From Salpingoeca rosetta (Eukaryota > Protista > Choanoflagellata): DNA of 64,000 bases. The first letter of the stretch is position 1. The number at the start of each line of letters is the position of its first letter. The notes under the pieces are model-generated. The model saw only the letters and a program-made list of their open reading frames with translations, made no database searches and had not been told where the DNA came from. A program made the translations under genes and the position numbers. Where the stretch lies: assembly GCA_033442325.1 (NCBI GenBank), contig JAWQFM010000025.1:809541-873540 (forward strand), written 5' to 3'. Below, in pieces: positions 51,601 through 54,156 of this stretch.

Positions 51601-54156
51601 GGAGGACGTGCGGACTACGCTGGCATACAGCGGCAGCGCCGTCTTTGAGCACTGGACGGATGCGCCGGCGCCGCTGAATGCAACGCAGCCGTACAACGTG
51701 TCGTCGTTTGCGGTGGACGCAGACGCCATCACGGTGACGCAAGTGCTGCTGGTGGACGAGGCCCTCAACACGCGCGACTCGCTGCTGTGCCTGGATGCGA
51801 CAGTGGCATACACGACACCGCAGGCACGCGTCGGTGGTCGCGTTGCACATCTCGAGGCTGCTGGGGCACAGTGCTCCAAGCTGGCCTTCCCGGCCCCGAG
51901 CAAGTCGTTTATTGAGACGCTCCAGGGCCAACTCATCATCTACATTGCCGCTGCCGTCGCTTTTATCGGTCAGTGGTTGTGCGTGTGTGTGTATGCATGT
52001 GTGTGTGTGTGTGCGTATGTGTGTGTGTGTGTGTGTGTGTGTGATTTTGCGTGTTTGGAGGGGATCGGAAACGGAGATGGTGATGGTTGTGACGGCTGTT
52101 GTTGTTGTTGCTGCTGTTCTCCTTGTGTTGCCGCTTTCTGCGGGTCATCACTCACCATGCACGTGCTTGTTTAATGCGCGATTGTATGTCGCTTGCAGCC
52201 ATTGTTGTCGCATCTGTGATTCTCGTCAAGAAGAACCGACGTAAGCTTGTTGTCTTGCCCGTGTCTGTGTGTGTTGTGTTGTGTTGTGTTGTCTTGTGTT
52301 GTGTTGTGTTGTCTTGTGTTGTCTTGTGTTGTGTATCCTTGCTTGCGCATTCAGCGCTTGCTGCGTGACTATCATCGATGCATGCGTTGAAAGGGCCCAC
52401 GCTGCTTGTGCTCACGTTTGCTTGTGTGCCCTGGTGTTTGTTGCTTACGCGATGCCATGTGATGCGATGCGATGCAACGCAACGCAACAGGCGCAGCAGA
52501 GGAGCGGAAGAAGAAGGCGGAGGCGGACGACACGTTTGACTACGGCGCACCAGTCCCGCACCCCCGTGGCATGGGCGGCGGCGGGCGTCGCTCCGGCAGC
52601 GGCCAGCCGCGCACATATGTCGACCCCGAGACTGGGGAGGTGCACCACGCGTACGACTACGTTGGACGCAAGGACGGTGGCGCCATTTACGGCAAGGCCG
52701 GGTCTGAGGCCACGTATGACGATGTGAAGCTGGCACCGCAGGACGACGAGGAGGACTACGGTCTGGTGCGGTCGGAGGACGATGACGAGGAGACGTACGA
52801 CCAGGCGGGCCGCGCACAGTACGAGATGGGCGACGGCCAGGACGAAGACGACTACGCGCTTGCTGCCAAGTACGACAACCCTGATGGCGATGACGAGGAC
52901 GATTACGCACTCGCGGCCAAGTACGACAACCGCACAGGCGGGGACGATGACGATTACGCACTCGCGGCCAAGTACGACAACCGCACAGGCGGGGACGATG
53001 ACGAAGACGACTATGCACTCGCCGCAAAATACGATAACCGCACAGGCGGCGATGACGACGACGACGATTACGCGCTCGCCGCAAAATACGACAACCGCTC
53101 TGGCGGTGACGACGACGAGGGCGACTACGCGTTTGCCAACAAGGTCGGTGCTCGCGGAAGCAAGGGCGCCGCCCGCAAGCGCGGAAAGAAGGCGGCTCGC
53201 CACTCCGACAGCGACTATGCGCGCGCAATGCACGACCGTCGCGGTGGCGGTGGCTCTGGGTCCGACACTGACGACATCTACGGGCTTGCTGAGGGCGAGG
53301 ATGACACGTATGGCCTTGCTGGCGCGTTTGTGAGCAGCGGCAGCAATGCGGACGAGAGCGACGACACGTACGGGCTGGCGGACGCTGGCGGTGACGGCGG
53401 ATCGAAGCGCAAGAAGCCAAGGAAGAAGAAGCCCAGAAAGGGGAAGAAGGCGTCCATGGACATTGACGAGACGTACGGGCTTGCTGGCGACTTCTCTGGC
53501 AGCGAGGCTGACGACGACGACGATGGCGATGGCGAGGGCGACTACAGCTTTGCCGGCAAGGTGCGGGGCAAGAAGCCGAAGCGAGCTCCGCGCAAGCAGC
53601 AGGATGAGAGCGAGGACGACTATGGCCTGGCTGGCGACGTGCTGTCGCAGGACAACGCCACGGACGGCGACGCCGATGACGATGATGACGACGTGTACAA
53701 GCAGGCGGGCGACGTCAACAGGTGTGTTTCAGGAAAATGTGTTTGGGGGGGGGTGTTGGTGTGTGTGTGTGTGGTGGTGGTGGTGTGTGTGTGAGTGTGT
53801 GTGTGTGTGAGTGTGTGAGCGTGTGTTGGTGTGTGATTGTGTGAGTGTGTGTGTGTGTGTGAGTGTGTGTTAGTGTGTGAGCGTGTGTTGGTGTGTGATT
53901 GTGTACGTGTGTGTGAGCGTGTGTTGGTGTGTGTGTATGTGTGTGTGTGTGTGGTGGGGCGGTAGATTGGAAGGTTATGGCTGCTGTGTACGCTCCTCTG
54001 CGCGGGGCCTCTCAATCCCCCAAATGCTCTTGCTCACGTTGATTCGTTGGTGCTGTTTGATTCTGTCACAGCTCGTCGCTGCAGGACAGCGGCGCACGTG
54101 GCGGAAAGAAGGACGACGATGACGATGAGCCCGTGTATTCCCGGGTTCACAAGTGA
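36612..54156 (+). CDS. Giant (~5,100 aa) type I membrane protein: signal peptide, EGF-like domain, ~14 DUF11-like/Ig-fold two-domain modules, furin site, TM helix, acidic Tyr-repeat cytoplasmic tail without kinase; exons 36612-36678, 36928-37000, 37427-45159 (frameshift near 42060), 45542-45814, 46055-51968, 52199-52240, 52491-53721, 54072-54156
   Basis: Signal peptide MRIQRGAMLALLWVLAAVITVT. EGF-like CTSDPCSVFATCTN...R|TCACDAGSSAGNGEVC. Recurring EPxL..DAGDxV...H...S..AYD..YDS.P..GR.Y and TS..T..I.E...LPE.T..FDFG..N motifs. TM LIIYIAAAVAFI|AIVVASVILV followed by KKNRR. Tail ends ...EPVYSRVHK*. Confidence 0.85.
37929..41976 (+). repeat. Near-identical 1842-bp (614 aa) intragenic tandem duplication: copies at 37929-39770, 39771-41612 and a partial copy at 41613-41976
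   Basis: Direct sequence identity; the ORF track also shows matching antisense ORFs offset by 1842. By eye only two differences separate copies 1 and 2 (V>A near 38698/40540, D>N near 39237/41079). Confidence 0.95.
52841..53136 (+). repeat. Coding tandem repeat: five copies of D/E-rich DYALAAKYDN in the receptor cytoplasmic tail
   Basis: Read directly from the translation of exon 52491-53721. The copies differ at synonymous sites but keep both tyrosines. Confidence 0.9.

What the first reader, a model, noticed from the sequence alone, without database searches (positions are those of the whole stretch)
52491..54156. Kinase-less giant receptor with a 29-tyrosine acidic docking tail
Seen: after the TM helix, a ~440 aa D/E/G-rich tail with no folded domain contains 29 Tyr. 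They include five paired DDYALAAKYDN repeats, six YGL(A/V) motifs, one TYDDV and several basic K/R clusters. Established: acidic residues before a Tyr favour Src-family phosphorylation, pYxN binds Grb2-type SH2 domains and pYD(E/D)V binds Nck-type SH2 domains. Choanoflagellates have rich pTyr/SH2 machinery, and some of their receptor kinases carry Tyr-repeat tails. Inference: this is a non-catalytic Tyr-phosphorylated receptor, using the same logic as immunoreceptors, LAT or nephrin. It would turn adhesion or clustering into multivalent SH2 recruitment, possibly as condensates.
Basis: partly seen in the sequence, partly recalled or inferred. Interest (0 to 1): 0.85.

Follow-up and report, generated by a model that had tools for sequence, protein, structure and literature searches.

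The report
Giant kinase-less receptor, conserved tyrosine-motif tail
A 5,131-residue surface protein of the choanoflagellate Salpingoeca rosetta ends in a disordered, acidic 442-residue cytoplasmic tail with 29 tyrosines in a repeated motif that is conserved in two other choanoflagellates, which makes it a good but unproven candidate for a phosphotyrosine docking platform that has no kinase of its own.

Summary
Window 52491-54156 holds the last two coding exons of S. rosetta PTSG_13117 (5,131 aa, uncharacterised). RNA-seq reads join the TM exon, a 42-nt mini exon, the tail exon and the last exon. The transcript ends near 54.6 kb, and no kinase or phosphatase domain is present. The tail (442 aa, net charge -51) has 29 Tyr, five DDYALAAKYDN repeats, six YGL(A/V), one TYDDV and four basic clusters. 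AlphaFold2 predicts it to be disordered.

New here: the M. brevicollis ortholog and an uncultured marine relative (TARA metagenome) carry the same kind of tail. Each has 12-16 copies of an acidic-Y-x-[L/F/M]-A motif. Tyr is the best-conserved residue, and all 43 motif copies have Tyr, never Phe.

The Grb2-type (YxN) and Nck-type (YDDV) readings are not conserved. About 40-55% of the tyrosines have Asp at -1, which human c-Src disfavours. No phosphorylation data exist.

Best reading (about 50%): a giant adhesin-like receptor whose tail is a multivalent phosphotyrosine docking array. There is precedent: kinase-less S. rosetta membrane proteins with YxxP arrays (PMC5043372) and RM2 tails (PMC3584944). 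I class it as a new variant of a known kind. First-stage notes of this scan flag other acidic Tyr tails elsewhere in this genome.

The parts
36612..36671 (+). Start codon and signal-peptide exon (MRIQRGAMLALLWVLAAVIT...)
   Evidence: First 20 residues of P0001 map here. Hydrophobic N-terminus.
36612..51928 (+). Ectodomain exons with introns. An N-terminal EGF-like Cys-rich piece is followed by about 15 units of roughly 300 aa, each a pair of Ig-like beta-sandwiches (DUF11/TIGR01451-type). There are 61 N-x-S/T sequons.
   Evidence: tblastn map of P0001 onto the window. Repeat starts and sequon count. TIGR01451 hit at 28.1 bits, above the 24-bit cut-off. AF2 model of one unit, pLDDT 81, two beta-sandwiches. 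Foldseek hits to integrin alpha legs and SdrD/SdrG/FnBPA/PrgB adhesins.
51929..51968 (+). First part of the single transmembrane helix (LIIYIAAAVAFI...), end of the large exon
   Evidence: Only region with a 19-residue Kyte-Doolittle mean above 2.2. Exon end supported by RNA contigs.
52199..52240 (+). 42-nt mini exon: second half of the TM helix (AIVVASVILV) and the stop-transfer KKNR(R)
   Evidence: RNA contig pieces 52198-52240 and joint 52240>52491, GT..AG, 30+32 reads. Frame check.
52491..53721 (+). Tail exon: 410 codons of the disordered acidic tail, holding 28 of the 29 tyrosines
   Evidence: AF2 mean pLDDT 46 with no secondary structure beyond the juxtamembrane helix.
52613..52627 (+). 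Juxtamembrane TYVDP (YxxP) site, conserved in position in all three orthologs (TYVDP / FYVDP / TYADP)
   Evidence: Alignment A2. Regex check. Lies within the sub-threshold EphA2_TM Pfam matches.
52841..53130 (+). Tandem array of five (D/E)nDDYALAAKYDN(R/P)xGG units
   Evidence: TRF period 51-57, 5.2-5.3 copies. Tyr context table.
53174..53200 (+). Basic cluster 1 (RKRGKKAAR), conserved in position after the DYAFAxxVG motif in all three orthologs
53405..53449 (+). Basic cluster 2 (KRKKPRKKKPRKGKK)
53564..53596 (+). Basic cluster 3 (RGKKPKRAPRK)
54072..54156 (+). Last coding exon (SSLQDSGARGGKKDDDDDEPVYSRVHK, then stop). Its VYSRV matches MYSHV near the M. brevicollis C-terminus.
   Evidence: Joint 53717>54068 (cut +4 = 53721>54072), GT..AG, 88+56 first-mate-on-minus reads plus contigs. 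Alignment.
54157..54600 (+). 3' UTR. Transcript coverage falls away by about 54.6 kb.
   Evidence: Depth table, and an RNA contig ending at 54596.

Best explanation
PTSG_13117 is a giant type I surface protein. It has a signal peptide, one EGF-like piece, and about 15 tandem pairs of Ig-like beta-sandwiches that form a long adhesin- or integrin-leg-like rod. This is followed by one TM helix and a 442-residue, intrinsically disordered, strongly acidic cytoplasmic tail with no enzymatic domain.

The tail is an array of short linear motifs centred on tyrosine: 12-16 copies per ortholog of acidic-Y-(G/A/S/N)-(L/F/M)-A. Some are paired with K-Y-D. There is also a juxtamembrane Y(V/A)DP and a C-terminal YS(R/H)V. 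Polybasic clusters are interspersed.

The most likely mechanism is as follows. When the ectodomain is engaged or clustered, tyrosine kinases acting in trans phosphorylate many of these tyrosines. Candidates are a receptor kinase or a cytoplasmic kinase that tolerates Asp at -1, and Src-type kinases for the T/I/V-Y sites. The phosphorylated tail then recruits several SH2/PTB proteins at once, so it acts as a kinase-less docking scaffold.

Shown: gene structure, expression, topology signals, absence of catalytic domains, predicted disorder, motif array, and conservation of the tyrosines. Inferred: phosphorylation, the identity of the kinases and readers, and any clustering trigger.
For: Gene model and expression:
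- Stranded RNA-seq covers all exons and proves the three splice joints around the TM and tail. Coverage ends near 54.6 kb.

No catalytic domain:
- Pfam at E<=1 over the whole 5,131 aa gives no kinase or phosphatase.
- None of the 150 listed of the 160 PK_Tyr_Ser-Thr matches in the genome lies in this window; 10 matches were not listed.

Disorder:
- AF2 mean pLDDT is 46. Only a juxtamembrane helix and a small hairpin at YVDPETGEV are predicted.

Conservation:
- The M. brevicollis ortholog P0011 is 28% identical over the membrane-proximal 1,391 ectodomain residues (E 6e-155). It has the same kind of tail (28 Tyr, 16 motif copies).
- A TARA Oceans genomic scaffold (P0010/L002) shares both intron positions of the tail exon. 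Its tail has 24 Tyr and 15 motif copies.
- In the three-way alignment, Tyr is invariant in 16 of 22 ungapped columns, against 70 of 289 for all other residues (Fisher p = 6e-6). Between S. rosetta and TARA, 22 of 22 aligned Tyr are kept, against 53% for other residues (p = 1.5e-6).
- All 43 aromatic-x-[LFM]-A motifs have Tyr and none has Phe or Trp. Phe does occur freely at +2. This is what a need for the hydroxyl group predicts.
- Only 50% of conserved residues use the same codon, so the conservation is due to selection rather than recent divergence.

Machinery in the same genome:
- At least 60 SH2 exon matches and at least 160 tyrosine-kinase-type matches.

Precedent:
- Disordered acidic Tyr repeats (RM2) in M. 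brevicollis RTKB2 are phosphorylated by RTKB2 and MbSrc1 and bind the MbSrc1 SH2 domain (PMC3584944).
- Kinase-less S. rosetta membrane proteins with YxxP arrays give phosphopeptides that bind the M. brevicollis CRK SH2 domain (PMC5043372).
Against: - There is no direct evidence that any of these tyrosines is phosphorylated. No choanoflagellate pTyr site data were found.
- The conserved core (hydrophobic at +2, Ala at +3) matches no SH2 or PTB consensus that I know (my recollection, not tested).
- Asp at -1 in roughly 40-55% of sites is disfavoured by human c-Src (PMC6077704).
- Conservation extends to +2, +3 and +4. That fits any peptide-binding module, phospho-dependent or not.
- Only three sequences support the conservation argument.
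- The motif array is unique to this gene in the genome: 6 of 14 DDYxLA pattern hits are here and the rest are at control level. A shared signalling code across receptors is therefore not seen.
Confidence: 0.5

Rival explanations
1. Phosphorylation-independent motif array. The acidic-Y-x-[LFM]-A units are repeated binding sites for a cytoskeletal, trafficking or scaffolding protein that reads the unmodified peptide. They would tether the giant ectodomain multivalently to the cortex or control its sorting.
For: Conservation covers +2 (L/F/M), +3 (Ala in 16-18 sites per tail) and +4 (Gly/Ala/Asn), as well as the Tyr. The motif fits no SH2 or PTB consensus that I know. The array is private to this gene family, as expected for a dedicated partner.
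Against: Tyr is never replaced by Phe in 43 motif copies, although Phe is common at +2. Acidic residues upstream of Tyr are the general preference of tyrosine kinases (PMC6077704). Regex tests for known unmodified-Tyr signals fail: there is no YxxPhi at the motif (+3 is Ala), no NPxY and no acidic dileucine.
Confidence: 0.25
2. Polyampholyte tail with a physical role. Acidic blocks and polybasic clusters, with Tyr as 'stickers', drive self-association or membrane binding (coacervate-like clustering under the membrane), without a specific reader.
For: Blocky charge pattern: 116 acidic and 65 basic residues, with four tight basic clusters. One cluster is conserved in position. AF2 predicts disorder.
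Against: A purely compositional role does not explain register-exact conservation of Y-x-Phi-A, or 22/22 Tyr retention at 53% background identity. It also does not explain the absence of Phe or Trp at the aromatic position.
Confidence: 0.12
3. Signal-to-nucleus tail. The cytoplasmic domain is released by proteolysis. The K/R clusters act as nuclear localisation signals, and the acidic and aromatic stretches act as a transcription activation domain.
For: KRKKPRKKKPRKGKK and related clusters resemble classical NLS (my knowledge). Acidic-plus-aromatic/hydrophobic patterns are typical of acidic activation domains. All three orthologs have basic clusters.
Against: No cleavage site, DNA-binding partner or nuclear evidence is available. 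Only one basic cluster is conserved in position. Activation domains tolerate Phe, Trp and Leu in place of Tyr, which is not seen here.
Confidence: 0.06
4. Non-functional low-complexity expansion, or a mis-annotated or luminal segment (for example tyrosine sulfation sites).
For: The five DDYALAAKYDN units are nearly identical at the DNA level, so recently expanded. Acidic Tyr contexts also fit sulfation consensus (my knowledge).
Against: The tail is spliced and expressed and is conserved across deep choanoflagellate divergence with half of the conserved codons changed. Topology places it in the cytoplasm: N-terminal signal peptide, 61 sequons and 39 Cys on the N-terminal side, no Cys and KKNRR after the TM on the tail side.
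Confidence: 0.03

Closest known systems
Kinase-less choanoflagellate transmembrane proteins with cytosolic YxxP arrays (S. rosetta PTSG_05573, PTSG_12435, PTSG_12436; M. brevicollis A9VAL3, A9V449), proposed as BCAR1-like CRK SH2 docking proteins (PMC5043372)
   Same: Same organisms. Single-pass membrane proteins without a kinase domain, with many repeated acidic Tyr motifs in a cytosolic region. Proposed to be phosphorylated in trans and read by SH2 domains. PTSG_13117 also keeps one conserved YxxP site (Y[VA]DP) next to the membrane.
   Different: PTSG_13117 is not among the proteins reported there. Its repeated motif is Y-x-[LFM]-A, not YxxP. It has no cytosolic SH2-like domain. Its ectodomain is about 4,650 aa of Ig-like pairs rather than TSP1, DUF5011 or Cys-rich modules. 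No peptide from it has been tested for binding.
RM2 repeats in the C-terminal tails of M. brevicollis RTKB receptor tyrosine kinases (PMC3584944)
   Same: Disordered, very acidic (pI 3.9) repeated tail modules, each with a Tyr preceded by acidic residues. Experimentally phosphorylated and bound by a Src SH2 domain. A lineage-specific invention of choanoflagellates.
   Different: RM2 units are about 80 aa long with one key Tyr (EEVYEAI / EEVYGAV, Val at -1), and they sit behind an active kinase domain. Here the units are about 10-19 aa, mostly with Asp at -1, and the protein has no kinase. No sequence relation was detected.
Animal non-catalytic tyrosine-phosphorylated receptors and scaffolds (immunoreceptors/NTRs, LAT, nephrin, Draper/MEGF10)
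   Same: Membrane proteins without enzymatic activity whose cytoplasmic tyrosines are phosphorylated in trans and recruit SH2 proteins multivalently (definition in PMC11399299). Acidic Tyr contexts resemble those of LAT (my knowledge).
   Different: No homology. No ITAM, ITIM, NPxY or conserved YDxV/YxN. The ectodomain is about 100 times larger than that of typical NTRs, so kinetic-segregation triggering is unlikely (inference). Phosphorylation is not shown.
Bacterial and archaeal DUF11 / TIGR01451 repeat surface proteins, MSCRAMM adhesins and integrin alpha 'leg' domains (ectodomain only)
   Same: The ectodomain units hit TIGR01451 above its cut-off. Giant bacterial DUF11 or 'fimbrial isopeptide formation D2' proteins are distant sequence hits (P0013, P0014). 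The AF2 model of one unit matches integrin alpha thigh/calf and SdrD/SdrG/FnBPA/PrgB Ig-like pairs (Foldseek E 2e-10 to 1e-7, TM 0.25-0.47).
   Different: This is a eukaryotic type I membrane protein with an EGF-like N-terminus and a cytoplasmic signalling-type tail. Isopeptide or ligand-binding features were not tested.

Membership tests
Non-catalytic tyrosine-phosphorylated receptor (NTR/immunoreceptor-type) | Membrane receptor with no intrinsic catalytic domain | tested here: met
   No kinase or phosphatase Pfam hit at E<=1 over 5,131 aa. Transcript ends about 450 nt after the stop. None of the listed PK_Tyr matches lies in the window.
Non-catalytic tyrosine-phosphorylated receptor (NTR/immunoreceptor-type) | Conserved cytoplasmic tyrosine motifs | tested here: met
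   16 of 22 Tyr columns are invariant in three orthologs, against 24% for other residues (p 6e-6). 43 of 43 motif aromatics are Tyr.
Non-catalytic tyrosine-phosphorylated receptor (NTR/immunoreceptor-type) | Tyrosines phosphorylated in vivo by Src-family (or other) kinases | not testable with these tools
   No choanoflagellate pTyr site data found. Asp at -1 in 12 of 29 sites argues against c-Src-like kinases for those sites.
Non-catalytic tyrosine-phosphorylated receptor (NTR/immunoreceptor-type) | ITAM / ITIM / ITSM-type consensus | tested here: not met
   Regex finds 0 ITAM and 0 ITIM in all three tails.
Grb2-type pYxN docking sites | Asn at +2, kept in orthologs | tested here: not met
   Five YDN in S. 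rosetta. The aligned sites are YDQ/YDA (TARA) and YDM/YDT (M. brevicollis).
Nck-type pYD(E/D)(V/P) docking sites (nephrin-like) | YDxV/P motif, kept in orthologs | tested here: not met
   A single TYDDV in S. rosetta. TARA has DYADA and M. brevicollis has none.
CRK-type pYxxP docking sites (as in PTSG_05573, BCAR1) | Repeated YxxP motifs in the cytosolic region | tested here: inconclusive
   Only one positionally conserved YxxP (TYVDP / FYVDP / TYADP), plus 1-2 non-conserved ones per tail. This is not an array.
RM2 repeat (RTKB tails) | About 80-aa unit with EEVY(E/G)A(I/V)-type site behind an RTKB kinase domain | tested here: not met
   No kinase domain. Units are 10-19 aa. No YEE[ILV]-type Src-consensus site and no EEVY in any Tyr context. 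The RM2 description comes from PMC3584944. Full RM2 sequences were not compared.
Eph / ErbB receptor TM-juxtamembrane segment (PF14575, PF21314) | Pfam match above the gathering score | tested here: inconclusive
   EphA2_TM scores 24.8 bits (S. rosetta) and 19.4 bits (M. brevicollis), against a cut-off of 28.9. TM_ErbB1 scores 23.2 against 27.1. Both orthologs hit, but below threshold, and the matches are largely the TM helix plus basic stop-transfer.
DUF11 / TIGR01451 repeat proteins (ectodomain) | Repeat model match above cut-off and beta-sandwich fold | tested here: met
   TIGR01451 scores 28.1 bits against a cut-off of 24. Pfam DUF11 scores 20.3 against 24.6, below cut-off. AF2 gives two beta-sandwiches per unit. 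Foldseek matches adhesin and integrin-leg domains.

The most novel reading that the evidence does not exclude
PTSG_13117 and its orthologs would be a choanoflagellate-specific class of kinase-less adhesion receptor. A private, previously undescribed phosphotyrosine motif (acidic-pY-x-[L/F/M]-A, 12-16 copies) would be written in trans by a kinase that tolerates Asp at -1, and read by a dedicated SH2 or PTB domain. Engagement of a rod-like ectodomain (of order 100 nm by my rough estimate from about 30 Ig-like domains) would then be converted into highly multivalent, possibly condensate-forming, pTyr signalling in a unicellular relative of animals.
Probability: 0.3. Interest if true: 0.65.

Novelty: new variant of a known kind. 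Interest (0 to 1): 0.5.

Why it matters
Choanoflagellates have very large sets of tyrosine kinases and SH2 domains, but almost none of their physiological substrates or receptor-proximal circuits are known.

This gene is concrete, expressed and conserved, and it offers a simple, testable motif. It would give the field a handle on several points:
- peptides for kinase and SH2 specificity screens;
- a CRISPR target in a tractable species;
- a test of whether 'receptor without kinase plus multivalent pTyr tail' logic predates animals.

The idea is not unprecedented. YxxP-array membrane proteins and RM2 tails have been described. The gain is therefore a new motif class and a new receptor architecture rather than a new principle.

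If the motif turns out to be phosphorylation-independent, it would still define a new conserved short linear motif that links a giant surface adhesin to the cell interior.

Tried and rejected
Searches that found nothing:
- Paralogs of the tail in the same genome: protein, DNA and degenerate-pattern searches found only the gene itself.
- More orthologs: the exhaustive phmmer search gave only self and the TARA fragment as true relatives; the other hits (P0002-P0004, P0006) are unrelated repeat proteins. The region-restricted search for full-length relatives with a similar tail gave only self. The profile search with the three tails gave nothing, probably swamped by Asp-rich low complexity. The JGI metagenome scan gave nothing. 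The DYALAAKYD DNA pattern gave one chance hit in a bacterial leucyl-tRNA synthetase.
- ESM Atlas and PDB sequence searches of the tail gave nothing usable.

Literature:
- No site-level pTyr data for choanoflagellates.
- PTSG_13117 is not mentioned in any searchable main text.

Known motifs checked by regex and rejected for the repeated unit: ITAM, ITIM, YxxPhi, NPxY, YEE[ILV], acidic dileucine and PxxP.

Motifs considered from memory and rejected, not tool-tested:
- LIR/AIM needs L/I/V at +3; here it is Ala.
- FFAT needs Asp/Glu or pSer at position 4; here it is L/F/M.
- The syndecan C1 'DEGSYxL' resemblance is too weak.

Not used:
- Complex prediction, because no specific partner is claimed and phosphotyrosine cannot be modelled there.

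Set aside:
- RNA-read 'joints' at 52095-52118 and 54902-54942, and loose ends at 53541 and elsewhere, are repeat-driven cross-mapping (CTG/GTT and GAC repeats) and are not isoforms.
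Full report
**What is at the coordinates**

The window is from the choanoflagellate Salpingoeca rosetta. An exhaustive protein search with the tail exon returns an identical 5,131-aa protein, PTSG_13117 / XP_004988293.1. It is annotated only as hypothetical or 'EGF-like domain-containing'. The finding's start, 52491, is the first base of the large tail exon. Its end, 54156, is the last base of the stop codon.

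**Gene model, tested with reads**

I laid two stranded RNA-seq runs (raw reads) and two sets of transcript contigs on 51300-55800.
- Transcription is on the + strand.
- A GT..AG joint 52240>52491 has 30 and 32 reads.
- A GT..AG joint 53721>54072 has 88 and 56 first-mate-on-minus reads (95 and 57 counting both mate orientations).
- Contigs run 51300-51967 / 52198-52240 / 52491-52927.

The TM exon, a 42-nt mini exon, the tail exon and the last exon are therefore one mRNA. Coverage continues about 450 nt past the stop and falls away near 54.6 kb. No joint leaves the last exon.

The spliced frame is open. It reads ...LIIYIAAAVAFIAIVVASVILV-KKNRR-, then the tail, then ...EPVYSRVHK-stop. The start codon is at 36612.

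- The tail is 442 aa after the TM helix, with 29 Tyr, 91 Asp, 25 Glu, 63 Gly, no Trp or Cys, and net charge -51.
- It has five DDYALAAKYDN units. The DNA tandem array has period 51-57 nt and 5.2-5.3 copies at 52841-53130.
- It has five YGLA and one YGLV, one TYDDV, and four polybasic clusters.
- Shuffling the tail 20,000 times never gives more than 4 Y-x-[LFMIV]-A matches. The real tail has 12.

**No folded or catalytic domain**
- Pfam over the whole protein at E<=1 shows no kinase or phosphatase.
- AlphaFold2 with the three-ortholog alignment gives a mean pLDDT of 46. The only predicted elements are a juxtamembrane helix (residues 2-18) and a tiny hairpin at TYVDPETGEV.
- None of the 150 listed of the genome's 160 tyrosine-kinase-type matches lies in this window; 10 matches were not listed.

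**Topology**

An N-terminal signal peptide, 61 N-x-S/T sequons and 39 Cys lie before the only strongly hydrophobic segment. The tail side has KKNRR directly after that segment and no Cys. The tail is therefore cytoplasmic. This excludes tyrosine sulfation.

**The ectodomain**

About 15 units of roughly 300 aa follow an EGF-like N-terminus.
- One unit modelled with the internal repeats as its alignment gives two beta-sandwiches (pLDDT 81).
- Foldseek matches integrin alpha leg domains and the Gram-positive adhesins SdrD, SdrG, FnBPA and PrgB.
- TIGR01451 (DUF11-type repeat) is hit above its cut-off.
- Giant bacterial DUF11 proteins are distant sequence relatives.

This is a long, rod-like, adhesin-type ectodomain.

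**Orthologs and conservation: the main new result**

1. A 1.5-kb TARA Oceans metagenome scaffold (L002, protein P0010) encodes a tail 56% identical to the S. rosetta tail. Its acceptor and donor sites are at the same codon positions, so it is an ortholog from an uncultured relative.
2. M. brevicollis MONBRDRAFT_37818 (P0011, 3,996 aa) matches the membrane-proximal 1,391 ectodomain residues at 28% identity (E 6e-155). After its TM helix it carries a 541-aa acidic tail with 28 Tyr.

All three tails hold 12-16 copies of the same core, acidic-Y-(G/A/S/N/T/Q)-(L/F/M)-A. Examples are DDYALAAK, DTYGLAGD and GDYSFAGK in S. rosetta, and GDYNFAGG, DDYAMARRKSS and EDYTFAHR in M. brevicollis. No shuffle out of 20,000 reaches the observed count in any of the three tails.

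Further shared features:
- The K-Y-D partner tyrosine of the paired repeat.
- A juxtamembrane T/F-Y-(V/A)-D-P.
- The first basic cluster.
- The C-terminal (V/M)YS(R/H)V is also kept where its exon is available, in S. rosetta and M. brevicollis; the TARA scaffold ends before the last exon.

Tyr is the best-conserved residue class:
- In the three-way alignment, 16 of 22 ungapped Tyr columns are invariant, against 70 of 289 for all other residues (Fisher p = 6e-6).
- Between S. rosetta and TARA, 22 of 22 Tyr are kept, against 167 of 317 other residues (p = 1.5e-6).
- All 43 aromatic-x-[LFM]-A motifs have Tyr and none has Phe or Trp, although Phe is common two positions later.
- Half of the conserved residues use different codons in the two closest sequences. 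The conservation therefore reflects selection.

**What the conservation does not support**
- The Asn of YDN (Grb2-type) is Q/A in the TARA relative and M/T in M. brevicollis.
- TYDDV (Nck-type) is not kept.
- ITAM, ITIM and NPxY are absent, and a YxxPhi reading fails because +3 is Ala.
- The only canonical SH2-type motif kept in position is the single juxtamembrane YxxP. This is the CRK SH2 consensus, which the M. brevicollis CRK SH2 domain is known to bind (PMC5043372).
- Asp occupies -1 at 12/29, 11/24 and 15/28 tyrosines. According to PMC6077704, c-Src does not tolerate an acidic -1 residue, whereas EGFR prefers it. If these sites are phosphorylated, a receptor kinase or another Asp-tolerant kinase is the better guess for the DDY sites. 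Src-type kinases are the better guess for the T/I/V-Y sites.

**Is the motif a shared code?**

No. The tail has no paralog in the 55-Mb genome. DxYGLAG occurs only in this gene. Of 14 genome-wide DDYxLA pattern hits, 6 are in this gene and the rest are single hits at the level of the reversed-pattern control.

**Context for a pTyr reading**

The same genome has at least 60 SH2 exon matches and at least 160 tyrosine-kinase-type matches. Two experimental precedents exist in choanoflagellates:
- RM2 repeats are disordered and acidic. They are phosphorylated by RTKB2 and MbSrc1 and bind the MbSrc1 SH2 domain (PMC3584944).
- Kinase-less transmembrane proteins with cytosolic YxxP arrays exist in S. 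rosetta (PTSG_05573, PTSG_12435, PTSG_12436). Phosphopeptides from PTSG_05573 bind the M. brevicollis CRK SH2 domain (PMC5043372).

PTSG_13117 is not among these proteins and uses a different motif. First-stage notes of this scan also flag other acidic Tyr tails elsewhere in this genome. I did not check those notes.

**Verdict**

The gene model, the absence of a kinase and the conservation of the tyrosines are now shown. The functional claim remains an inference.
- About 0.5: a trans-phosphorylated, multivalent docking tail.
- About 0.25: a phosphorylation-independent motif array.
- The remainder: physical, nuclear-signalling or non-functional readings.

Because the kinase-less pTyr-array concept already has published choanoflagellate examples, I class this as a new variant of a known kind, with a new motif and a new giant adhesin-like architecture. 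Interest is moderate.

Noticed in passing
window 41997-42060 (annotated 'intron' 42015-42036): The annotated protein bridges a reading-frame change with a 22-nt GT..AG 'intron', which is too short to be credible. At the end of the third near-identical 614-aa repeat, the sequence is 2 nt shorter than in repeats 1 and 2. The frame used so far runs into a stop at 42137, while the downstream ectodomain continues in another frame. This is either an assembly indel or a real frameshift in the ectodomain.
   Followed up: partly
window 25468-25686 (+), with ORF 25890-27479 (+): An SH2-domain exon (Pfam SH2, 50.9 bits) lies about 11 kb upstream of this gene's start codon. It is followed by a coiled-coil-like ORF with a weak FAM184 hit. 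It probably belongs to a separate SH2 adaptor gene. Adjacency in a eukaryote is not evidence of a link.
   Followed up: partly
P0001 4670-4741 (window 51929-52627 across two introns); P0011 3437-3493: The TM-juxtamembrane segments of both the S. rosetta and the M. brevicollis protein give sub-threshold hits to receptor-tyrosine-kinase TM-JM models. EphA2_TM scores 24.8 and 19.4 bits against a cut-off of 28.9. TM_ErbB1 scores 23.2 against 27.1. The S. rosetta match reaches its TYVDP motif and the M. brevicollis match ends just past its TYADP. This might hint at descent from, or convergence with, RTK juxtamembrane regions.
   Followed up: partly
window 37900-42000 (+): There are three almost identical 1,842-nt (614-aa) ectodomain repeats. 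The same 90-nt stretch recurs at 38313 and 40155, and a diverged copy of it is at 41997. GC content here is 67%, against about 55% elsewhere. This indicates very recent internal duplication or concerted evolution.
   Followed up: no
window 55993-63999 (+) and 56167-56537: A stop-free frame of about 2,670 codons runs on the + strand downstream of the gene. It has no Pfam hit, and neither do the long ORFs on the opposite strand. It contains a 371-N assembly gap. RNA coverage was near zero (<=1x) at 55075-55527, rose to about 11x in one run at 55528-55678, and the laid stretch ended at 55800, so nothing further downstream was examined.
   Followed up: partly
window 54620-55075: A Gln/Leu-codon repeat region just after the 3' UTR attracts very deep, multi-mapping RNA reads and many false 'joints' to the CTG/GTT repeat inside intron 51969-52198.
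   Followed up: no
L007 2933-2959 (-): The peptide DYAFAAKYD, nearly the tail repeat, occurs by chance inside a bacterial leucyl-tRNA synthetase in a metagenome contig. It is unrelated to the tail.
   Followed up: yes
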